Part shown: positions 1 through 63,800 of the stretch, piece by piece
Numbering within the stretch: position 1 is the stretch's first letter
How the letters are laid out: every line of letters starts with the position of its first letter
Position numbers and translations under genes: made by a program
NCBI RefSeq assembly: GCF_006345805.1
Contig: NC_043020.1
Span: 4,092,001 to 4,156,000, forward strand
DNA: 64,000 nucleotides
Direction: 5' to 3'
Source of the DNA: Octopus sinensis
Lineage: Eukaryota
The notes under the pieces: model-generated
What the model saw: the letters and a program-made list of their open reading frames with translations, nothing else
What the model was told of the DNA's origin: nothing
Database searches by the model: none

Positions 1-603
1 AAGTGGAACATATGTAATGATGAATAAATAACACAAAAGAAATCTTCCAATTTCTTGTTTTGTTACATACATACACATACCTGTGTATGTGCACACTCGC
101 ACACCTTTGCTGTTGTTTCTTTCAGTTGGTCAAGCATGCGACCTGGGATTGCTCCAGGTAGATTTATGTCCATTTCTTCTTTTCCTTTAGGTCTTCTGTG
201 TGTGGACATGTGTTTCAATTGTTAAACTTGCTGGTTGTATTTGCTTGTAGCTGATGTTCTCTAGTGTTGAAGGTAGACCAAAGGGAGACACTCAGTTGAC
301 CGGGTGCTTGGACTTTCAGTCTGTCTTTGTGGCACCAGGATTCCAAGTGGTTTACATCAAGCTGATCTCACATCTAGAAAACAATTATGGTAATGTGTTT
401 GGGCCCTTTTACTTATCATATCGTTATTGCTTGTCCCTGGGTGGTTGGGATGAAGCAGATCTATGATCCTATGATCAAACTCTTTCCAACCAAGACCATC
501 CCGAATTTTCTTCAGGCATATTTCACCCATGATCACAACATCTAAAGTGTCCTTCTTTCCAATGACAGCAAAGTTATTTGAAGGATATTGGTATTTATTT
601 CTA

Positions 604-834
604 GGCGGCGAGCTGGCAGAATCGTTAGCACGCCGGGCGAAATGTTCAGCGGTATTTCGTCTACCATTACATTCTGAGTTCAAATTCCGCCGAGGTCAAC
701 TTTGCCTTTCATCCTTTTGGGGTCGATAAATTAAGTACCAGTTATGCACTGGGGTCAATGTAATCGACTTAATCCATTTGTCTGTCCTTGTTCGTGCCCT
801 CTGTGTTTGGCCCTTGTGGGTAGTAAAGAAATAA
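604..834 (+). mobile_element. tRNA-derived SINE, family A (Meta/Sauria-like central domain), full length with TSD
   Basis: Head GGCGGCGAGCTGGCAGAA, B-box GAGTTCAAATTCC, central GCCTTTCATCCTT..GGGGTCGATAAATTAAGTACCAG, tail CCCTTGTGGG..TAAAGAAATA. 14-bp TSD GTATTTATTTCTAG at 591-604 and 835-848. Several near-identical copies in the window. Confidence 0.85.
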
Positions 835-4926: not shown

Positions 4927-5405
4927 TTGCCATATTCTGAACGCCTTACTTCCCTGGGCACGGACACATTGAAACTCCGACATCTGGCAGCTGACTTGGC
5001 AGACACCCATGAAATTATTAACCATCTTACTAACAATAACTCTGAGCACCTTTTCAAACTCCACCTGTCTAACACCCGTGGACATGTTTACAAAGTCAGA
5101 AAACAGCACAGCTCCCATGACTTTCGGAAACATTTTTTCACGCTGAGAGTTGCTGAAGCATGGAACAGACTGCCGGCATCATTGTTAGTTGTCGGAGCAC
5201 TGCATCCTTCAAAACTTCCATGCTTCCTGAGATTCGCCAACACTACACCTGATTTTCTCCCTTCTATACACACACAAGCATGTATCTGACTCATACACTG
5301 TTCACTTCCCAGACATTTGTACATTACTGCATATGCTTTATATGCACTTTTGACAAGTTGTGGTGCACCTGAGCACTGTATACAATAATTTCATAATTAT
5401 CATTA
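4927..5405 (+). mobile_element. CR1-like LINE 3' fragment
   Basis: Near-identical to 25000-25478; LPYSERLTSLGTDTLKLR...HFFTLRVAEAWNRLP; tail TTTCATAATTATCATTATT. Confidence 0.85.
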
Positions 5406-6229: not shown

Positions 6230-6329
6230 NNNNNNNNNNNNNNNNNNNNNNNNNNNNNNNNNNNNNNNNNNNNNNNNNNNNNNNNNNNNNNNNNNNNNNN
6301 NNNNNNNNNNNNNNNNNNNNNNNNNNNNN
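6230..6329. other. Assembly gap (100 N)
   Basis: Run of 100 n; lies in the intron between two in-frame Reeler exons. Confidence 0.99.
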
Positions 6330-8129: not shown

Positions 8130-10320
8130 AATGATAAAAATAATAATGCTTTCATTTATTTGCTACAAGGGTGAAGGATGAGGGGGAGGGGTGCAATACA
8201 AAGACAGAGATAAAGTGTTGGGGTTCACATATAATGAAATGATTATCAAAAAAAAAAAATAGTATACATGGTAGACACTGAAAAAGAATGGACATATACA
8301 TCATCATCATCATCATCATCATACATTCTCAGAGTGGTTGGCGTTAGGAAGGGCATCCAGCTGTAGAAACTCTGCGGCGAGCTGACAGAAACGTTAGTGT
8401 GCCGGGCGAAATGCTTAGCAGTATTTCGTCTGCGTTACGTTCTGAGTTCAAATTCCGCCAAGGTCGACTTTGCTTTTCATCCTTTCAGGGTCGATAAATT
8501 AAGTACCAGTTACGCACTGGGGTCGATGTAATCGACTTAATACCTATGTCTGTCCTTGTTTGTTCCCTCTGTGTTTAGCCCCTTGTGGGTAATAAAGAAA
8601 TAGGTAACGATCACGCTCAAATGGTGCCCTTTTACATACATAGTATATAAAGGATTTTAAAAAAAAACAGGACAAGGATGATAGAGATGTAGCTCTCCTG
8701 ATACAGGAAGACCCCTAGGGATAATCAAGGAACCCCACTCTCTGAGATCTCCCTGAACACCAAGAGCAAGTGCTCTCTGTAATTGCTTCTCTCCAATGTA
8801 CAGGTTTACACTTACAGAGGTACCATCCACTCTTGCCATTTTGGCAACTTTTATCCACTCAAGGACAATGCTTCCCTCTCCACTCTCAGTTTCCTTTTCA
8901 AATGAAATTTGAAGAAGTGAATAAGAGCTCTGCCAAAGACGAAAGTGTCTGTCCTCATGCCTTTCAGCCTTGTCCACCAAACAACCTCTTTCACCACAGC
9001 GACCAGGCAAAGGAAACACTGCCTTGCTTGCTCGACAGAAGGAGAGTGGCAGGGCAATTGTCACTGCAGACTCAACTGACAGATGGATTCACCCAACAAG
9101 TGACAGCAACAGTTCGACATAAACCCAGAAATCAGCAATGCCAGGACACTGAAAGAGTGTGTGCAGAATGGTTTCATCACATCTGACAGCACATCCATGC
9201 TTGTAGAGCTTATCACAAACCAGTAGCACCTTCTGGTAGCACTGATGGGCCAAGGACATTTGGAAATTATCCATGATAGTTCCTGACTGGAAAATCCTCC
9301 ACAACAGACTAGTGAGTTCCTTTTTGTCAGTGTCCAGAGTTTCCCTTGCCACTAATCCTCTATAAATTTCTAAAGTGGGACATCCACTGATCCCATTCCT
9401 CATCTTGTAGAGGGTTGTGAGTGCCTGACAACATTCGAGGGGCCAGGCCCTCGGTCTTGGTCTTTTCTTCACCCAGGACTGCAGCTCCATCAAGGAGATG
9501 AGCTGCAGAAAGACAAGCCTCGCAAATGGAGCCCACACATGCTCACCATCCAAAAATCGTTGCAGGTGGCATAACCTAAGAGCATGTCTGCACATTTAGA
9601 GCCACAGTAGACATAATCTGCTATTCCCAGAATGCTGGCAACAGAGTGATAACCTGACCATTGGAACACGTCCCTTCCATAAGAATTTAAATAAGAAACT
9701 CTCCAACCTGGTCAAGCAGTAATTGGGACAAGGCATGATGGTCAGGTGATAAATGATAATGGAGGGAATGTAGGTATTCAACACCTTTGCCTGACCTTTC
9801 ATGGAGAGTTTCTTCTCAGCTCATTTTTGGGTAAGACTAGCCACCCTGTTCACCACCTCATCCCAGTTCTTATCAACCTGAAGGTCAGGACCAAACCAGG
9901 CCCCAAGCAGTTTAACAAGTCCATCAGTCCAGCATCCAATGATGCTGTCTGATGACATAGTCCTGCCTCTTCTGGAGCCCAACCACAAATCCATCAATCT
10001 GTTGGCATAGATTTTAGCCCCTGCAACCAACCCATATTCCTTTAGGATAGGAGCAACCATCCCCACTCCCAATGCATTGTCCACATATGCTGACATTACC
10101 TTTCTTTGTCCCAGTTCAATAGGGAAGTCCCTTAGCTGTTCCAACTTCCACAGCAGTGGCTCAAGTGCCAATACATACAGAAGCGGCAACAGCAAGCAGC
10201 CCTGATGGACTGAGCATGTGATGCCAAATGGCTCCAATAAGGGACCATTTACTTTGACCACTGAACAGGTGTTGCTGTGCTTTTCAGTGATCCAGCCTCT
10301 AAAAACTGCCTAACTTGTTT
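8130..10320 (-). mobile_element. Decayed Tx1/L1-like LINE (RT, zf-RVT-like region, 3' UTR, (ATT)n tail)
   Basis: VHQGCLLLPLLYVLALEPLL...SAYVDN (RT) and RCDETILHTLFQCP (zinc-binding region); multiple stops; interrupted at about 8300-8640 by an RTE tail and a SINE. Confidence 0.75.
8374..8602 (+). mobile_element. tRNA-derived SINE family A nested in an RTE tail fragment
   Basis: Same consensus as 604-834. Confidence 0.8.
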
Positions 10321-12149: not shown

Positions 12150-13085
12150 TGCCTCCCAACACCGTGGTTCCAGGTTCAGTCCTGCTGCATAGCACCTTGA
12201 GCAAGTGTCTTCTACTATAGCCTCGAGCCAACCAAAGCCTTGTGAGTGGATTTGGTAGACAGAACTTGAAAGAAGGCTGCGAGCTGGCAGAAACGTTAAC
12301 ACGCAGGGTGAAATGCTTAGTGGTATTTCGTCTATCTTTACGTTCTGAGTTCAAATTCTGCCGAGGTTGACTTTTCCTTTCATCCTTTCAAGAGTTGATA
12401 AATTAAGTACCAGTTACGCACTGAGGTCGATGTAATCGACTTAATCCCTTTGTCTGTCCTTGTTTGTCCCCTCTATGTTTAGCCCCTTGTGGGCAATCAA
12501 GAAATAAGAAACTGAAAGAAACCCATCATATATATATATATATAATGGGCTCTTCCATCATTAGATGAAGTATAGGGGTTTGAGAGTTTCTTATCAAACA
12601 ACCACACAAACGATTTGTTTGCAATGATCAAATGTTTGTGTCCACATAAGCTCACCCCCCCCCTCCATCAAATTGACATTACCTGTACAGGTGCTACATG
12701 TCAGATGACGAAATGATCGCAGAGCAAAGTGAAATGAAGTGCTTTGCTCGAGGACATGACGCAATGCCTGGTCTGGGAATCAAACCCATGATCTCGCAAT
12801 CATGAGTGCAACACCTTAACCACTGAGCCATGTGCCTTCACGCACACACACACACATATTTATGTGTGTGTGTGTTTGTATCTGTGTTTGTCCCCCCAGC
12901 ATGACTTGACAACCGGTGCTGGTGTGTTTACATCCCCATAACTTAGCGGTTCGGCAGAAGAGACCAATAGAATAAGCACCAGGCTTACAAAGAATAAGTC
13001 CTGGGGTCGATTTCTCTGATTAAAAGGCAGTGCTCCAGCATGGCCACAGTCAAATGACTGAAACAAGTAAAAGAATAAAAGAATA
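12150..13085. mobile_element. Nested SINE cluster: CORE-type SINE (family B, +) split by SINE A (12275-12506, +) and a third tRNA-SINE (about 12600-12840, -)
   Basis: Family B GGTTC(C)GGGTTCAGTCC..ACCTTG(A/G)GCAAGTG resumes after the inserts; TSD-like AGAA(C/A)(T/C)TGAAAGAA flanks SINE A; minus-strand head GGCACATGGCTCAGTGGTTAAGG. Confidence 0.75.
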
Positions 13086-19900: not shown

Positions 19901-20751
19901 TGATCTTGAACCCCCCCACCACCACCACCACCAGTGACAAGATTACTAGCAAATGATAATAACACTCATCCTCATCATTTAACATCCATTTTCCATGCTG
20001 GCATGGGTTGGACAGATTGACAGGAATTAATAATTAGTCCTGGGTATAATGTTAAACTGTATCTGGTTGTGGAGTCTCAGAGTGGGAATAATGGAATCAC
20101 CCTTAGCCATAATAACCTCTAGATCATGGTTGGGCAAGGTGTTGTTTCTGTAAGCCGACCCCAAGACCAGGTTGGCATCTGGTGGAATTAAGTCTGCCAT
20201 ATTGGAGTGGGAGTGTTTTTAACCGTGGTCGGCAACCCCTCTAGAGATGGTGTCTCAATAAAAACACAGATGTCCCCTCATCACCACAACCTTCACTTAT
20301 GAGTGTAAATTTCAAATACAAATATATTGAACAATAGTGTGAATGAGGTTGGAAGTGATAATGGTCAAAAGTTTCTTGTCTGGCAGAGTCCGCTTGGTCA
20401 TAATTGAGCTGAAAGAAAGGAGGACAGACTGACTGAATGCAACTGTGACGGAATATTTCATCCAAAGTGAAGCTAGCAGATTTGGCCAAAAGAACAGAAT
20501 GAGAGAGAGATGGCTTGAAAAGGGAATGTTTGATGTAACCCAGCAAAAAATTAAGTGACCAAAATAAGAAAAGCTGAGTAACAGAAGTAGAAATCAAAGA
20601 AACCCAAAGCAAGATCTACAAGATGGAAAACAGCAATGTGTAGGATATAGATTAGAAGATGTCAATGACACTGAAAGAGCAGAGACATGGCGGTTCAGAT
20701 ATCAAGTGCCGAGGGACCCCTTGAACAGCTAGTTGTTGCTGGTAGACTACA

Positions 20752-20975
20752 TCAGTTGTTAGTTGTCGGAGCACTGCATCCTTCAAAACTTCCATGCTTT
20801 CTGAGATTCACCAACACTACACCTGATTTCCTCCCCTCCATACACACACAAGCATGTATCTGACTCATACATTGTTCGCTTTCCAGACATTTGTACATTA
20901 CTGCATATACTCTATACGCACTTTCTGACAAGTTGTGGTGCACCTGAGCACTGTATACAATAATTTCATTATTAT
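20752..20975 (+). mobile_element. CR1-like LINE 3' end
   Basis: Near-identical to 25255-25478. Confidence 0.85.
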
Positions 20976-20999
20976 TTTTATTTTACATGATATTACCCA

Positions 21000-22189: not shown

Positions 22190-24020
22190 ATATGCTTATT
22201 CAATTAAAAGTTTCAAAACCTGGTTTCTTGCATAAACGGAATTTCCGTCGTTTAAAACATTGGGAAAAAATTTCGAAAAAGCTCGAAATTTTTTTTGGCG
22301 GGGGGGGGGGGGGGGGGAGGATTTTTTTTTCTTTTCATATTCCTAATCTCCGACATCTAAAAAGCAGGAATCTGAAGAAAAAAAAACTTTTTCAAAAAAA
22401 TGCATTTTTCAAGGCGAGGTGCGAAACTGCATTCGACCCCCGATTGCCTGAGAAATAATCTAAAATCACACACACACTGAGGTTTGTCAGATGAAAAAGG
22501 AATTGGTGGGTTGGAGGTGAGGAACGGAGTTGAAGGTTTGGCTAACGAGGTTTGTCTGTCGAATGACAAACAAATGTGAAAATAAGAATACAAGGAATTA
22601 TGTAAACATAGAAGGGCGCTTTTCCTTTTGATTCGATATTTTTTTTAAATCAGTAACAAAAAACCATACTACCTTTGAAATTGTTGCTGTTAACCCTAGG
22701 TCAGCCCTGCGTAAGCAACTATGATCAAAACCAATCCAGGTATGACCAGTGTAGAGAATAATGTGAAGGTTCTCGACACATTTTGTTTCAGAGACTGACG
22801 ACTTTCACGGCGATTTGGCTGTTGTTTCTAGCATTTGAAACGACCACATACAGGCCTCCCCATTAAATAAAATTTCTGACAATAACAAATAATTAATAAC
22901 AAAAGAAAAAAAAATATTTTTTAAACCATGTTGTGAAGCCGTGTCAGTAATGCCTTACTGCCTTTACTCACAAATCTCAACATTGTGAGTTCAAATCCTA
23001 CCCAAGTTAACATTTGCTCATCCGCCCTTTTCGGCCAGAAGCATCAACTCGCCCCTCCTCTGCCAAAATTTGAAACAATTACCGCAGAGCATCGGACAAG
23101 CTTGCAGTGTTTGTTCCTTCCTACCCTTTACGTTCTGAGTTCAAATCACGCCAAGGCAAACGATGTTTTCCATCCTCCTGGGGCTGGTGAAATAAAATAG
23201 CTATCAGTTGGCTGAGTCGAGCCAACTTCTGTTAATTAACTAAGCAAGATTAATTAATATTCTTTGAGCGTCGATAAAAAAAGATGACTTACCTGTTGTT
23301 CAGGTGTGGCCTGCCGTTCTAATCCCCAACAAATCTTCCGGGTACACTCAACGCTTTCCCCTTATTTTGTGTCTCCTTCTTCGAGTGTCTCCGTCTCCGT
23401 CGTCCTTATTGCTTTGCTTGTCGTTGACGTCGAGGACGACGTGGTCGTGATAGTAGGGAGAGCAGCAGCAGCAGCAGCAGCAGCAACAAAAGCAGAGGTT
23501 GTCAGTAGTAGTAGTAATAGTAGTAGTGGTGGTAGTGGTGGTGGTGACAATATTAGTGTGGTTAATTGGGATGGCTATAACGCAAAACGGCTGGTGGAGG
23601 TGGTGGCGGCGACAGTCGTTGTAGTGGTGGTGGTGGTGTTGACAGCAGCAGAGAAGTTGGGGATTGGTTTTGCTGGTGTAACAGGGCAACAACGTTTGGG
23701 ACAAGGCTTTCGTCAAGTCCTTCCACAGTACTTATGTGTGTGTGTGCGTGTGCGTGTGAGTATGTGCGATGGTATGTATAAATGTCAATGTGTGAATATA
23801 CAATTTATATATATATAGTATACACACCTCCGCTCCATTTTTTTGCAAATCATTCTCATTTAATTGTATATATTTTGTTTGTTTATTCATACGTTTCGTC
23901 TCATTCGATACCCTGACCCCAATGTTTGTTACGTCTGTCCTCATATCGTCCCCTCTTTTTCTCAACCTTATGGTAAATAAAGAAATTCTCTATCCCTCCC
24001 TCCCTCCCTCTCTCTCTCTC
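22190..24020. promoter_or_regulatory. CpG-retaining region, candidate promoter / first-exon zone
   Basis: Visibly higher CG-dinucleotide density than the flanks; contains a strong minus-strand donor at 23292 and GA/CT tracts. Confidence 0.4.
23293..23730 (-). other. Candidate non-coding 5' UTR exon of the FRRS1-like gene
   Basis: Perfect donor CAACAG|GTAAGT at 23292; all three minus frames stop before the donor; triplet-repeat-rich and CpG-rich; lies upstream of the ATG exon on the same strand. The 5' limit is unknown. Confidence 0.4.
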
Positions 24021-24237: not shown

Positions 24238-25478
24238 GTGGATGTTGTTTACCTGGACTTTGCTAAGGCTTTTAACTCTGTGCCACACAAAAGACTTATG
24301 GTGAAGCTTTCTGCGTTGGGTGTAAGAGACGAACTCTATAACTGGTTGAAGTCCTTTATTTTCGGCCAAAAAGAGGTTGTCACAGTTCTAGGACAGCACT
24401 CTTCACCCTATGAGATGACATCTGGTGTACCACAGGGATCTGTTCTTGGGCCCCTTTTATTTGTTGCATATGTTAATGACATAGATGCCAACTTAAAGAA
24501 TGTCACAGTGCTGGAATATGCAGATGACATCAAGCTGTACCTCGAAATAAAGAGGTCAAATCCTGTACACTATAGATCTCTATTGCAAGCAGACCTGGAC
24601 ACAATGCAGCAGTGGATCATGGACTGGCAACTCAAGCTGGCTGTGGACAAATGTACCACCATGCATTTGGGGAGGAGAAACCCAGCGTCCACCTACTCCC
24701 TCCACAACACTAGTCTCAAAAAGTCTTCATGTGAACGTGACCTGGGTGTTACTGTCGACAGTGATTTGCGTTGGACAAAACACATCGCTAAAATTGTCAA
24801 GAAGGCTGAGGGTGTCTTGGCATCACTCACCAAATCCTTTGTGAGCCGCTCTCCGGCTATCTATCTGCGGCTTTATATAGCTATGGTAAGACCTCACCTG
24901 GAATTTGCATCACCGGTCTGGAACCCCTATCTTGCCCAGGATATCAATCGTCTGGAAGCTGTTCAGCGACGTGCAACCAAAAGAATACCCTCCATCAGGC
25001 ATTTGCCATATCCTGAACACCTTACTTCCCTGGGCATGGACACATTGAAACTCCGAATTCTGGCAGCTGACTTGGCAGACACCCATAAAATTATCAACCA
25101 TCGTACAAACTATAACTCTGAGCACCTTTTCAAACTCCACCCATCTAACACCCGTGGACATATTTACAAAGTCAGAAAACAGCACAGCTCCCATGACTTC
25201 AGGAAACATTTTTTCACGCTGAGAGTTGCTGAAGCGTGGAACAGACTGCCGGCATCAGTTGTTAGTTGTCGGAGCACTGCATCCTTCAAAACTTCCATGC
25301 TTCCTGAGGTTCGCCAACACTACACCTGATTTTCTCCCCTCCATACACACGCAAGCATGTATCTGACTCATACACTGTTCACTTCCCAGACATTTGTACA
25401 TTACTGCATGTACTTTATATGCACTTTCTGACAAGTTGTGGTGCACCTGAGCACTGTAGACAATAATTTCATTATTAT
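24238..25478 (+). mobile_element. 5'-truncated CR1-like LINE with open 363-aa RT C-terminal ORF (24238-25329) and 3' UTR
   Basis: DVVYLDFAKAFNSVPH, SGVPQGSVLGPLLF, YADD, VRPHLEFASPVWNP motifs; uninterrupted frame; (ATT) tail. Confidence 0.92.
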
Positions 25479-25708
25479 TTTATATGCATGTGTGGGTGTG
25501 TGTATCTAATGTGTTAGTCTCTCCTACTGCTTGACAATTGGTGTTGGTTTGTTTACATCCTTAAATGTTAGCAATTCAGCTAAAGCGAGGGAATATCCCT
25601 ACCCACCCCCACTCCCGCATGGCCGGATATGTTTTTGCAGAACATTGGAAATGAATGACACCACTTTGTGTGACAGTGACATTCATTTACAATTATTACA
25701 AAGTCAAG

Positions 25709-25760
<52 letters not shown>

Positions 25761-26923
25761 GACATTGACCTGGCATTAAAGTAGTTCTTAAGTTAGATGT
25801 CATCATCATCATCGTCACCATTTAACGTCTGTTTTCCATGCTGGCATGGATTTCAACAGTTTGATGGGAGCTGAAGGGCTGTTCAAGCTCCCTGTCTGTT
25901 TTGGTATGGTTTCTACAGCTGGATGCCCTTCCTAATGCCAACCACTTTACACAGTGTATTGACTGCTTTCATGCAACACTGGCAAGGTAACTTTTTATGT
26001 GGCACCAGCACTTGTTTTAACCATTTTGTAAAATATTTCTGTTATTAAATCCTAGAACTTCGTATGTCAAAACAAAGACAAACAAATTAATTTTTCCTGG
26101 AAATGGAAATTAAAGTAAAAAAAAATTAACCTTGAAACAGAAAAAGCTTGAAAGAAATGGTAAAACTGTTGAAACAAGGAAGAAATGCCAGAACCAAAAT
26201 ACCTGCAAAAGTTTTATTAAGTTGAAAACATATCATGCATTTATGGTGTAACATTATAAAAACAATGATAAAGATTTCTTATTTTGTACAGAAGTTAAAA
26301 CTCCAAAAGAATTGCCAGCAAATATTTATGAAATACAAATCAGATTGGAACCTGGTGCAGCCTCCTGGCTTGCCAGTCCTCAGTCAAAGCATCCAACCCA
26401 TGCCAGCATGGAAAGCAGATGTTAAATGACGATGACAATGATGATGATGATGGTGATGATGACAAAATCAAATCATTTTAATGAAATTCAAATTAAAAAC
26501 CAAACATCTAATAAACAACATGTTAGATTTTCATGCTAAGAGATGCTGAGAAATCTTTTAAAATCAGTCTTCTGAACTGAGAGTGGTCAAAGGCCAACAA
26601 TTTTTGGGGTAGGAGTACTACCCAACTAGTGTTTATTTTATTGGCCTCAGAAAGATGAAAGCCAAAGTCAAAGTATGCAGAATTTCAACTTACAAGAGTC
26701 AGAAGAAATGCCGCTAAATATTTTGTCCATCAATTCTTCTAGTTTGGTGCTTTAACTCTTCTGGATTATATGAAATTGCAACACAAACATGGAAAACACA
26801 AACATGGAATTTGTGTTACAATTTGCTAAAATAACAGGTTTCTATTTTTGAAACATTTAATGTAATTGAAATCAGTTGATTTTGGAAACAAATACTAAAG
26901 ATATATTTTAAGAATATATCTTT

Positions 26924-27252
26924 GGTCTCCCCTGGTCCGAGAGGGTTGGGAAACCTCTGAACCACCTCCCGTGATAGGGATCAGGGCCTGGAACCAACCC
27001 CGTGAACAAGGAATTCCTGGTAGGCGTGGGTCATCGGACCACGTCGATCACGTCCCTGCCCTTTGTACACACTGCCCGTCGCTACTACCGATCGAATGGT
27101 CCGGTTAAGTCCTCAGATCTGGCCAACAAGTTTGCTTACGTGTGGCGGTGTCCCACGCCGACATTGGGGCATTCTTTGATGGCTCGGAGAAGATGATCAA
27201 ACCCAATTGCTTAGAGGAAGTAAAAGTCGTAGGTGAACCTGCAGAAGGATCA
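26924..27252 (+). pseudogene. 18S rRNA 3'-terminal fragment (dispersed pseudogene)
   Basis: Universal 18S motifs GTCCCTGCCCTTTGTACACAC(T)GCCCGTCGCTACTACCGAT and AGAGGAAGTAAAAGTCGTA..GGTGAACCTGC(A)GAAGGATCA; CpG-type substitutions and a short deletion (ACAAGGTTTCCGTA missing). Confidence 0.93.
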
Positions 27253-27256
27253 AAAA

Positions 27257-27486
27257 GGTGGCGAGCTGGCAGAAACGTTAGCATGCCAGGTGAAATGCTA
27301 AGTGGTATTTCGTCTATCTCTACGTTCTGAGTTCAAATTCCGCCAAGGTTGACTTTGCCTTTCATCCTTTTGGGGTTGATAAATTAAGTACCAGTTACAC
27401 ACTGGGGTCGATATAATCGACTTAATCCATCAGTCTGTCCTTGTTTGTCTCCTCTGTGTTTAGCTCGTTGTGGGTAGTAAAGAAAT
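27257..27486 (+). mobile_element. tRNA-derived SINE family A fused downstream of the 18S fragment
   Basis: Full-length consensus match; its 3' flank carries the second copy of an 18-bp TSD. Confidence 0.88.
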
Positions 27487-27646
27487 AGATATATTTTAAG
27501 AATAAGAAAATACATTTAGAAATTCAAAGTATTTAAAGATCAAATCACATTACTATAATACTGGAATGTGTTAGATGACAGTTTTTGAAAGACTAACCTA
27601 TGGCACAGCAGCATCTAATGGAAACAATGACGGTTTTGAAACTGGT

Positions 27647-27681
<35 letters not shown>

Positions 27682-27939
27682 TACATATATGCACACATAA
27701 CCTGTAATCATTAATCATATTTTTTAAAAAAACAACAGAAAGAAAATTGTTTAAATTTTCTTTCTGTTGTTTTTTTTCATTGACATTATAGTTCAAAACA
27801 TATTCCACTTCTTTTTCATTTTGTAGGGTGACCTGTGGAAGCAATGAATGGACAAAACCGGAGAACAATCCTGTGTGTTTGCATATATGTATTTACACTT
27901 ACATACATACATATGTATGTGTGTGTGTGTATATATGTG

Positions 27940-31045: not shown

Positions 31046-31559
31046 CCTATATTTCAGAATCTTTAAGAAATCTTTTTAAGAAACATTATTAAATATTTCT
31101 GGATTTAATATTTATATATTTTTATTTTTAATTCAAGATTTCCAAATTCCAACCTATCAAGTAAAAAAAAATATATATCTATAATCAATAAGTGTATCAT
31201 GTTTATATTAGTAAATATCAATAATTATATGTTTGATCAATAATCAATGAATGTATTGTGCCAGTGTCACGTTAAAAGCACCCAGCACACAGTGCAAAGT
31301 GGTTGGCATCAGGAAGGGTACCCAGCTGTAGCAACCAAGCCAAATCAGACTGGAACCTGGTGCAGGTCTCCAGTGAGCCAGCTTTGGTCAAACTGTCCAA
31401 TGCATGCCAGCATGAAAAATGGACATTAAAAGATGATGATGATAATGACGATGACGAAGATTTTATTTTATTTGGAACTTGAAAAATAATTTTAAACCAC
31501 CTTGTAGCCAGATGTATTTTAAAAATAATTGGATTTCAAAATATTCAAAACCAAGATTA

Positions 31560-50990: not shown

Positions 50991-51211
50991 CCCTTTAGTG
51001 TTCGCATTATTCTGCCAAAATTAATCCTTTTTCATCCACATTGCCTTGAACTAATCAGGCATTATCTTGGTGCTATGAGATTTTGATGAGGTAGCTGTTA
51101 ATTTTTGAAACAACATTGTAGGGTTGGTGTGAGAGACCAGATCTGGCCAGTTTGAACATAAAACAGGCAGAATACTTTTGGCCGGATATGGCCGGTTTAA
51201 ATGCTAAAGGG
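50991..51211. mobile_element. piggyBac-type MITE
   Basis: TTAA|CCCTTTAG ... CTAAAGGG|TTAA with TTAA TSDs at 50987-50990 and 51212-51215; subterminal ATTCTGCC/GGCAGAAT. Confidence 0.85.
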
Positions 51212-51240
51212 TTAAACCATTAGAACTAATATCCATACTT

Positions 51241-52052
51241 CTATCACCTCCCACTTCACCACTATCACCTCCACCCACTTCATCCCTTTCACCTCCTACT
51301 TCACCTCCATCACCTCCCACTTCACCACTATCACCTCCACCCACTTCATCCCTTTCACCTCCTACTTCACCTCCATCACCTCCCACTTCACCACTATCAC
51401 CTCCACCCACTTCATCCCTTTCACCTCCTACTTCACCTCCATCACCTCCCACTTCACCACTATCACCTCCACCCACTTCATCCCTTTCACCTCCTACTTC
51501 ACCTCCATCACCTCCCACTTCACCACTATCACCTCCACCCACTTCATCCCTTCACCTCCTACTTCACCTCTATCACCTCCCACTTCACACCACTATCACC
51601 TCCACCCACTTCATCCCTTTCACCTCCTACTTCACCTCCATCACCTCCCACTTCACCACTATCACCTCCACCCACTTCATCCCTTTCACCTCCTACTTCA
51701 CCTCCATCACCTCCCACTTCACCACTATCACCTCCACCCACTTCATCCCTTTCACCTCCTACTTCACCTCCATCACCTCCCACTTCACCACTATCACCTC
51801 CACCCACTTCATCCCTTTCACCTCCTACTTCACCTCCATCACCTCCCACTTCACCACTATCACCTCCACCCACTTCATCCCTTTCACCTCCTACTTCACC
51901 TCCATCACCTCCCACTTCACCACTATCACCTCCACCCACTTCATCCCTTTCACCTCCTACTTCACCTCTATCACCTCCCACTTCACCACTATCACCTCCA
52001 CCCACTTCATCCCTTTCACCTCCTACTTCACCTCCATCACCTCCCACTTCAC
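51241..52052. repeat. 66-bp minisatellite, about 12 copies, G-free on the + strand
   Basis: Unit ACTATCACCTCCACCCACTTCATCCCTTTCACCTCCTACTTCACCTCCATCACCTCCCACTTCACC; period 66 (51261 to 51327). Confidence 0.95.
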
Positions 52053-52146
52053 ATGCACTCTTCCAAAAGTTGAAGGATATACCCCCACCCTCATTCTTAT
52101 CCCCTGTCACCACCAATTATTATTATTATTATTATTATTATTATCA

Positions 52147-62983: not shown

Positions 62984-63233
62984 TATTATTATTATTTATT
63001 ATTATTATTGAGGTGACAAGCCGGCAGAATCATTAGCATGGCAGCCAAAATGCTTAGCGATATTTCATCCATATTTACGTTCCGAGTTCAAATTCCACTG
63101 AGGTCAACTTTGCTTTTCATCCTTTCAGGGTTGATAAAATAAATATCAGTTGAGTATTGGAGTTGATGTAATTGACTATACCCCTCCCCACAAATTTCAG
63201 GCCTTGTGCCTCTAGCAGAAAGGATTATTATCA

Positions 63234-63289
<56 letters not shown>

Positions 63290-63800
63290 ATTAAGGCAGT
63301 GACTGGCAGAATCATTAGCATGGCTTTACATTTTGCATTCAAAGTCCAGCAAAGTTGATTTTGCCTTTCATCCTTTTGGGGTCAATAAAATAGGTTTGAG
63401 TTGAATTTAGGGGCTGACTTAACCAACTTATCCCCTCCACCAAAATTGCTGGCCTTGAGCCAAAATTTGAAAACATTATTATTATTATTAGATTTTACCT
63501 TAACTGTCCATATTTTTTTTTCCAGTTTTTCATTGTTGCAGTTGCTAGTAAACTCCAAGAGTCAGATAACTTCAAGCAGATTAAAGGAGTTCTAGCCATG
63601 ACCATCACATTATCAAACGTAGTCTTCTAAAGCAAACAACACTGTCTGATATGTTATTGTTTTTTTCAAAACAACAACAGAGAGGAAAGAATTCATTGCA
63701 ACATTCGTTACAACTTTCAATGCTTTCATTCCAAATGCAGTTAAGGTCAGCTTTGCCCTTTCTGTTTAAGGGGTCAATAAAAAAGTACAAATACAAGGTG
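62740..63800 (+). mobile_element. Cluster of old, degenerate family-A-related SINEs and (ATT)n tracts
   Basis: Repeated GAGTTCAAA...GGTCAACTTTGC.TTTCATCCTTT..GGG.T.(G/A)ATAAAAT segments. Confidence 0.6.

What the first reader, a model, noticed from the sequence alone, without database searches (positions are those of the whole stretch)
26899..27504. 18S rRNA 3' end fused to a SINE inside one 18-bp TSD: a chimeric retroposon
AGATATATTTTAAGAATA occurs exactly at 26899-26916 and 27487-27504, enclosing both the ~330-nt 18S fragment and the full SINE, so they inserted as one unit (seen). The rRNA part stops at the mature 18S 3' terminus (GGATCA) and is joined to the SINE head by a short A run, with no ITS1. 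This fits an RT template switch from SINE RNA to mature, possibly oligoadenylated, 18S rRNA. If it is multi-copy with the same junction, it would be a new 18S-headed SINE family. The ACAAGGTTTCCGTA deletion between CGTA microhomologies is a diagnostic marker.
Basis: partly seen in the sequence, partly recalled or inferred. Interest (0 to 1): 0.8.

Follow-up and report, generated by a model that had tools for sequence, protein, structure and literature searches.

The report
18S rRNA–SINE chimeric retrocopy in octopus
A 3' piece of 18S ribosomal RNA and a complete SINE were copied into an octopus genome as one unit; it is most likely a dead-end by-product of a reverse transcriptase jumping between RNA templates, which is a known process.

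Summary
An exact 18-bp direct repeat (26899-26916, 27487-27504) brackets four parts. These are a 10-nt filler, about 326 nt of the 3' end of eukaryotic 18S rRNA (Rfam, 141.8 bits), four A's, and a full-length 230-nt SINE. The 18S part lacks 14 nt of helix 45. Neither part has a repeat of its own, so they entered in one retroposition event.

Two corrections are needed. The rRNA stops at GGATCA, 3 nt short of the consensus end GGAUCAUUA. The 18S homology starts at about 26927, not directly after the repeat. The 10 nt in between look like a fold-back copy of the target site.

Four other full-length copies of the same SINE in the window have their own repeats and no 18S head. No other 18S piece is present. 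The host is an octopus.

Best reading: a one-off template jump from the 5' end of the SINE RNA to the 3' end of a trimmed or oligoadenylated 18S molecule. Chimeras of this kind are known in mammals and fungi, including 5S and 28S rRNA. The "new 18S-headed SINE family" idea has no support here. It could not be tested genome-wide. Interest is modest.

The parts
26899..26916 (+). 5' copy of the target-site duplication, AGATATATTTTAAGAATA
   Evidence: Exact 18-mer. The first 1-2 bases (A/AG) could instead be SINE-tail microhomology, so the duplication is 16-18 bp.
26917..26926 (+). 10-nt filler TATCTTTGGT at the 5' junction, a likely fold-back copy of the target DNA
   Evidence: It matches 9 of 10 bases of the reverse complement of 26894-26903. 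The inverted repeat 26894-26907 / 26913-26926 is 14 nt and 93% complementary, with a 5-nt loop. Only about 1 in 10,000 random 10-mers from the window give such a contiguous fold-back. It could instead be native 18S; this could not be checked.
26927..27252 (+). 5'-truncated retrocopy of the 3' end of 18S rRNA (Rfam model ~1524 to 1828), ending GGATCA
   Evidence: Rfam RF01960, 141.8 bits, E=2.6e-40; gathering-threshold hits.
27228..27232 (+). Site of the 14-nt deletion (ACAAGGTTTCCGTA, the 5' strand of helix 45) within CGTA microhomology
   Evidence: Gap against model positions ~1795-1809; sequence read.
27253..27256 (+). AAAA linker between the 18S part and the SINE head
   Evidence: Absent from the heads of the other SINE copies. 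The Rfam consensus has UUA here.
27257..27486 (+). Full-length 230-nt SINE with a B-box-like motif GAGTTCAAATTCC
   Evidence: Alignment with 4 full-length copies. It is 7.4% diverged from their consensus, and 7 of its 16 differences are CpG transitions.
27487..27504 (+). 3' copy of the target-site duplication

Best explanation
This is a single, dead-end chimeric retrocopy made in one target-primed reverse transcription event in an octopus genome.

The proposed sequence of events is:
1. A LINE reverse transcriptase nicked the AT-rich target and copied a SINE RNA from its tail to its very first base.
2. Instead of finishing, it jumped end to end onto the 3' end of an 18S rRNA molecule. That molecule had lost its last 3 nt and carried a few A's. 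Alternatively, the enzyme itself added the extra bases.
3. It copied about 340 nt of the 18S and then stopped.
4. The 5' end was sealed after the top-strand DNA end folded back on itself and was extended by 10 nt.
5. Repair produced the 16-18 bp target-site duplication.

The 14-nt loss in helix 45 arose either by a microhomology skip of the enzyme or by later replication slippage.

The element has no function. The 18S piece lies upstream of the SINE's own presumed polymerase III start, so it would not be passed on.

Shown directly: the anatomy, the single duplication, the full-length SINE, the 18S identity and the lack of an 18S head on sister copies. Inferred: the template jump, the state of the 18S 3' end, the fold-back step and the lack of re-transcription.
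For: One exact 18-bp repeat encloses both parts, and it is the only direct repeat in the region.

No duplication flanks the SINE alone.

The junction lies at the exact SINE head as defined by four other copies. It reaches the last positions of the Rfam 18S model, and no ITS1 follows.

Both parts are on the + strand.

Sister SINE copies carry their own repeats of 8-14 bp found by exact match (longer if a mismatch is allowed). One of them has 3 extra bases at its 5' junction. So this SINE family moves by the usual mechanism, and untidy 5' junctions occur in it.

Both halves look similarly aged. The SINE is 7.4% from consensus with many CpG transitions. The 18S part shows CpG-type changes at otherwise conserved positions.

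Chimeras with the same logic are documented: same orientation, direct fusion and one flanking repeat (PMC2104539). rRNA/LINE-1 chimeras are also documented (PMC13174262).

Short oligo(A) tails on 18S precursor 3' ends and on aberrant rRNA are documented in human cells (PMC5499762).
Against: Copy number in the genome could not be measured. No tool here holds octopus genomes as searchable DNA.

Ligation of the two RNAs before reverse transcription would give the same DNA.

So three things are not pinned down: the exact 5' start of the rRNA part, its true 3' end, and how far the copy has diverged.

The two adenines of the helix-45 loop are normally dimethylated in mature 18S and are a classical block to reverse transcriptases (my own knowledge). 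They are copied correctly here. That fits an immature or aberrant rRNA better than a mature one.
Confidence: 0.7

Rival explanations
1. The element is a copy of a propagating composite element, or was copied from a pre-existing fused transcript. The source could be an 18S-headed SINE family. It could also be a polymerase I or read-through transcript from a locus or rDNA unit where this SINE already sat next to the 18S 3' end.
For: The structure by itself cannot tell a fresh template jump from the copying of an already fused RNA. The 14-nt deletion could be a feature inherited from a master copy. A SINE derived from rRNA does exist in mammals (SINE28, PMC4994717).
Against: None of the 4 other full-length SINE copies carries 18S, and the window has no other 18S fragment. 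No SINE copy above 80% identity and no junction were found in 41 kb of Octopus vulgaris and O. sinensis DNA. A SINE landing within 3 nt of the 18S 3' end by chance is unlikely. The tRNA-like head features of the SINE (B-box-like motif, acceptor-like pairing) lie 3' of the 18S part, so a polymerase III transcript would be expected to leave it out (inferred). The 18S part starts at an arbitrary internal position.
Confidence: 0.08
2. The two RNAs were ligated end to end before reverse transcription, with the 18S 3' end joined to the SINE 5' end. The fused RNA was then copied in one pass without any template jump.
For: It predicts the same DNA. RNA ligation is discussed alongside template switching as a route to sense-oriented LINE-1 chimeras (PMC13174262).
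Against: A primary polymerase III transcript carries a 5' triphosphate, which is a poor ligation substrate (my own knowledge). The extra A's at the junction are what an end-to-end jump with non-templated addition, or an oligoadenylated acceptor, would leave.
Confidence: 0.12
3. There were two separate events. The SINE inserted first and made the 18-bp duplication. An 18S cDNA fragment was later captured exactly between the left repeat and the SINE head, for example during repair of a double-strand break. The reverse order is also possible.
For: Filler DNA (26917-26926) shows that some untidy repair took place at the left junction.
Against: It needs a second break at the precise SINE 5' end. 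It also needs the captured fragment to end at the 18S 3' terminus, in the same orientation, and to leave no duplication or deletion of its own.
Confidence: 0.05
4. Assembly artefact or a chance repeat.
For: The window is a draft-type assembly with a 100-N gap at 6230-6329.
Against: The gap is 20 kb away. A mis-join would not create an exact 18-bp duplication at the outer borders or a reconstructable empty site. About 0.03 chance matches are expected.
Confidence: 0.02

Closest known systems
Bipartite chimeric retrogenes made by LINE template switching (U6/L1 and others in mammals; WEIRD-MGL 'MINE' and WEIRD-MgSINE in Magnaporthe; PMC2104539)
   Same: Two unrelated RNA copies are fused directly in the same orientation. 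A single 10-20 bp direct repeat flanks them. The 3' partner is a retroelement that the LINE enzyme recognises. A SINE serving as the 3' partner has a precedent (WEIRD-MgSINE).
   Different: In the described class the 5' partner is a full-length small RNA and the 3' partner is 5'-truncated at a random point. Here the pattern is reversed. The 3' partner (SINE) is complete, the 5' partner (18S) is a truncated 3' fragment, and the join is end to end. The host is a mollusc, and the partner LINE was not identified.
rRNA/LINE-1 chimeric insertions in mammals (5S and 28S; PMC13174262)
   Same: An rRNA fragment a few hundred nt long (median 269 nt for 28S) is fused in sense to the 5' side of a retroelement and inserted in one event.
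   Different: That catalogue lists 5S and 28S, and 18S does not occur in its text. The partner there is LINE-1 itself, not a SINE. The 28S pieces are mostly internal fragments, not the 3' terminus.
[quoted passage not shown]
   Same: The 3' end of a large rRNA is retroposed into the genome.
   Different: SINE28 is multi-copy, is transcribed by polymerase III and is repeatedly re-derived. Here there is one copy, no evidence of transcription, and a conventional SINE attached.
SINE heads acquired or exchanged by template switching (passerine SINEs, PMC5729268; RTE chimeras with tRNA or 5S mentioned in PMC13174262)
   Same: It is the same kind of event that is thought to create new composite SINEs.
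   Different: Those events produced families that spread. Nothing here shows spread.

Membership tests
Chimeric retrogene / retrocopy made in one LINE-mediated event | The whole chimera is flanked by one short direct repeat (target-site duplication) | tested here: met
   Exact 18 bp at 26899-26916 and 27487-27504.
Chimeric retrogene / retrocopy made in one LINE-mediated event | The parts are joined directly in the same transcriptional orientation, with no separate duplication around either part | tested here: met
   Both parts are on the + strand. Only AAAA lies between them. No repeat flanks the SINE alone.
Chimeric retrogene / retrocopy made in one LINE-mediated event | The 5' part is a full-length cellular RNA and the 3' part is 5'-truncated at a random site (features i-iii of PMC2104539) | tested here: not met
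   The 18S part is only the last ~330 nt, and the SINE is full length. The logic is the same, but the jump happened at the template's end, not inside it.
Chimeric retrogene / retrocopy made in one LINE-mediated event | The 3' part carries the 3' end that the LINE enzyme uses | tested here: inconclusive
   The tail AAAGAAATA is shared by all copies. The partner LINE was not found; the LINE in the window has a different tail.
SINE (the 3' part) | Short, dispersed, multi-copy, and each copy has its own target-site duplication | tested here: met
   Five full-length copies of ~230 nt are in the window. Three of the other four have distinct flanking repeats.
SINE (the 3' part) | Head derived from a small RNA, with internal polymerase III A and B boxes | tested here: inconclusive
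   A B-box-like motif GAGTTCAAATTCC and acceptor-like pairing GGCGG/CCGCC are present. ARAGORN and Rfam do not call a tRNA.
   None of the 4 other full-length copies carries it, and no other 18S piece is in the 64 kb. The junction is absent from 41 kb of other octopus DNA. Protein-level searches with junction ORFs were empty but are uninformative. Genome-wide copy number cannot be tested with these tools.
   By inference, the boxes lie 3' of the 18S piece, so a polymerase III transcript would start at the SINE head.

The most novel reading that the evidence does not exclude
The copy is a member or founder of a propagating composite element that carries an 18S 3' fragment as its head. That would be the first SINE-like family derived from small-subunit rRNA.

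A milder novel reading concerns the 18S molecule that was copied. Its end is trimmed by 3 nt and A-tailed, and the two normally dimethylated adenines of helix 45 are read correctly. This may record an immature or surveillance-tagged 18S molecule meeting a LINE enzyme in the nucleus. On that reading such retrocopies are fossils of rRNA 3'-end states.
Probability: 0.05. Interest if true: 0.6.

Novelty: new member of a known kind. Interest (0 to 1): 0.3.

Why it matters
It is a clean example, with a perfect duplication, of an end-to-end template jump in vivo by the enzyme that moves octopus SINEs. The host is a mollusc, well outside the mammalian L1 and fungal MGL systems where such chimeras were described. 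It adds 18S rRNA to the RNAs seen in such chimeras. In what I could read, only 5S and 28S are listed.

It shows the raw material from which new SINE heads could arise. It also preserves details of both junctions: A's at the RNA-RNA join and a fold-back filler at the DNA join.

It does not open a new question, and nothing suggests a function.

Tried and rejected
1. I scanned metagenome contigs with the degenerate junction pattern GGATCA-N(0-15)-GGYGGCGAGCTGGCAG. The 23 hits matched only the 16-17 specified bases. The best one (L020) is an ordinary bacterial coding region. All are chance matches, and that collection holds no octopus DNA.

2. I searched the protein collection with the 73-aa ORF that crosses the junction and found no candidates. 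A six-frame translation of the whole insert gave 3 irrelevant hits. These negatives say little, because ORFs from non-coding octopus DNA are evidently not in that collection.

3. Exact look-ups of the 59-aa junction ORF, the LINE ORF and 10 other window ORFs found nothing. The assembly and species could therefore not be pinned down.

4. I fetched the two octopus loci that encode the closest LINE proteins, hoping for the orthologous empty site. Both are paralogous LINE copies.

5. I looked for the partner LINE. The LINE at 24238-25480 has an unrelated tail.

6. I searched the paper library for the SINE sequence as text and found nothing. The family name of the SINE therefore remains open. From memory its central part resembles the Nin-DC/Deu type domain; this is a lead, not a test.

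7. tRNA detection on the SINE consensus was negative.

8. The Rfam hit that extends to 26700/26789 upstream of the repeat was rejected as an alignment over-extension with low posterior probability.

Full report
**Observation**

The 18-mer AGATATATTTTAAGAATA occurs exactly at 26899-26916 and 27487-27504. Even with two mismatches allowed, only about 0.03 matches are expected in a shuffled window. A third match, with two mismatches, at 31510 is unrelated AT-rich sequence. It is the only direct repeat in 26850-27560, and the similarity ends exactly at the borders of the insert. Removing the insert gives a continuous AT-rich empty site.

**The 5' part**

Rfam's eukaryotic small-subunit rRNA model matches this region at the gathering threshold. 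When the region is searched alone it scores 141.8 bits, E=2.6e-40, and runs to the last model position, 1831. Confident alignment begins at about model position 1524, which is window position ~26927. The stretch that Rfam drags further upstream, across the repeat, has low posterior probability and is not rRNA.

Lineage-specific helices in the fragment still pair. An example is GCGUGG/CCACGU in the helix at model positions 1619-1642. So the source was a working rRNA, not a chance look-alike.

Fourteen nucleotides are missing: GUCGUA[ACAAGGUUUCCGUA]GGUGAACC.

The fragment ends GGATCA and is followed by AAAA. The model consensus ends GGAUCAuua. So the rRNA part stops 3 nt short of the usual mature end, or it carries two adjacent T-to-A changes. 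No ITS1 sequence follows.

**The 3' part**

Positions 27257-27486 are a full-length copy of a 230-nt SINE. Four more full-length copies lie in the window at about 603-832, 2703-2933, 8376-8601 and 12279-12505. They are 85-88% identical to it. Older relics lie at 63011-63177 and elsewhere.

The alignment fixes the head as GGCGGCGAGCTGGCAG and the tail as AAAGAAATA. Three of the four sister copies have their own flanking repeats of 8-14 bp by exact match. One has three extra bases at its 5' junction. None has an 18S head, and the window has no other 18S fragment.

The head has a B-box-like motif and acceptor-like pairing. It is too diverged for ARAGORN or Rfam to call a tRNA.

The focal copy is 7.4% from the consensus of the others, within their range of 5-9%. 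Seven of its 16 differences are CpG transitions. The 18S part shows the same type of change at normally invariant positions: ACCGCC to ACTGCC, GCGG to GCAG, and AACGAGG to AACAAGG. The two halves therefore look equally old, and the insertion is not recent.

**Left junction**

Ten nucleotides, TATCTTTGGT (26917-26926), lie between the repeat and the rRNA. They match 9 of 10 bases of the reverse complement of the target DNA at 26894-26903. Together with the end of the repeat they form a 14-nt, 93% complementary inverted repeat with a 5-nt loop.

Only about 1 in 10,000 random 10-mers from the window give such a contiguous fold-back. About 2% match somewhere in the empty site on either strand.

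I read this as the top-strand 3' end (...AAGAATA) snapping back on itself, being extended by 10 nt, and then switching to the cDNA. Without the host 18S I cannot exclude that these 10 nt are native rRNA.

**Host**

The LINE reverse-transcriptase ORF at 24238-25329 has its best named relatives in Octopus vulgaris (88% identity) and O. sinensis (72%). The two octopus loci I could fetch are paralogous LINE copies, not the orthologous site. They contain neither this junction nor a close copy of the SINE. The LINE in the window is not the SINE's partner, because the tails differ.

**Mechanism**

Three facts point to one target-primed reverse transcription event:
- One duplication encloses both parts.
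- The parts have the same orientation.
- The join runs from the exact 5' end of one RNA to the (near) 3' end of the other.

In that event the enzyme finished the SINE RNA and jumped to the end of an 18S molecule.

The four A's may be an oligo(A) tail on a 3'-trimmed rRNA. Short oligo(A) tails on 18S precursor ends and on aberrant rRNA are documented in human cells (PMC5499762). Alternatively, the enzyme added the bases itself.

Ligation of the RNAs before copying would give the same DNA.

A SINE that had first landed in rDNA exactly at the 18S border and was then co-transcribed needs an unlikely coincidence. Sequential insertion needs several.

The 14-nt loss may be an enzyme skip or later slippage.

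The two loop adenines of helix 45 are normally dimethylated in mature 18S and are a classical reverse-transcriptase stop (my own knowledge). They are copied correctly here. This hints at an immature or aberrant template.

**Comparison with what is known**

Chimeric retrocopies with one flanking repeat, the same orientation and direct fusion are well described in mammals and in Magnaporthe, including one with a SINE as the 3' partner (PMC2104539).

A 2026 catalogue adds 5S and 28S rRNA fragments fused to LINE-1, with a median 28S piece of 269 nt. It does not mention 18S.

The present case differs in three ways. The 3' partner is complete while the 5' partner is truncated, so the jump occurred at the template's end. 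The rRNA is 18S. The host is a cephalopod.

SINE28 shows that an rRNA 3' end can become a SINE (PMC4994717), but that family is multi-copy and is transcribed by polymerase III. Here the presumed polymerase III boxes lie downstream of the rRNA piece, so it should not be re-transcribed.

**Limits**

No tool here holds octopus genomes as searchable DNA. The metagenome scan gave only chance bacterial matches. Protein-level searches with junction ORFs were empty but are uninformative. Exact look-ups failed. Copy number, the orthologous empty site and the host 18S sequence therefore remain to be checked.

**Verdict**

The one-unit chimeric insertion is well supported. The family idea is unsupported and unlikely, at about 5%. 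This is a new member of a known kind, of modest interest (0.3).

Noticed in passing
window 26894-26926: A fold-back (snap-back) filler at the 5' junction. The 10 nt after the left repeat are an inverted copy of the target DNA that straddles the repeat's left edge. The arms are 14 nt, 93% complementary, with a 5-nt loop.
   Followed up: yes
window 603-832, 2703-2933, 8376-8601, 12279-12505, 27257-27486: All five full-length copies of this SINE are on the + strand, and all lie in the first 28 kb of the window. This may be an orientation bias relative to a host gene, or it may be chance (about 1 in 16).
   Followed up: no
window 24238-25480, 4927-5400, 20750-20978; L024 10686-11495: A CR1/jockey-like LINE has a 363-aa open reverse-transcriptase fragment and two further 3' fragments about 95% identical to it. 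In the O. vulgaris paralogue (L024), the last ~125 bp of the coding region is repeated in tandem about 6 times at ~121-bp spacing.
   Followed up: partly
window 26624-26723 (- strand), 23126-23195, 63011-63177, 63324-63395: Older, more diverged relics of the same or a related SINE (70-80% identity). One lies only 180 bp upstream of the focal insertion, on the opposite strand.
   Followed up: no
window 26780-26809: A perfect 15-bp tandem duplication (AACACAAACATGGAA x2) lies 90 bp upstream of the insertion site.
   Followed up: no
window 51204-52116 (- strand): A long minisatellite reads as an open frame of GGDSGEVGGDGGEVGGERDEV repeats. It is probably non-coding tandem DNA.
   Followed up: no
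window 6230-6329: A run of 100 N marks an assembly gap, so this is a scaffolded draft. It is 20 kb from the finding.
   Followed up: no
window 27233-27238: The two helix-45 loop adenines are normally N6,N6-dimethylated in mature 18S (my own knowledge) and are copied as AA. The 14-nt deletion starts just 5' of them and removes the positions that correspond to human m6A1832 and ac4C1842. This may be a clue to the modification state of the template or to enzyme skipping.
   Followed up: no
window 27826-27880: After a polypyrimidine tract and an AG, an open stretch encodes [18 protein letters not shown]. It may be an exon, in which case the insertion would lie in an intron.
   Followed up: no
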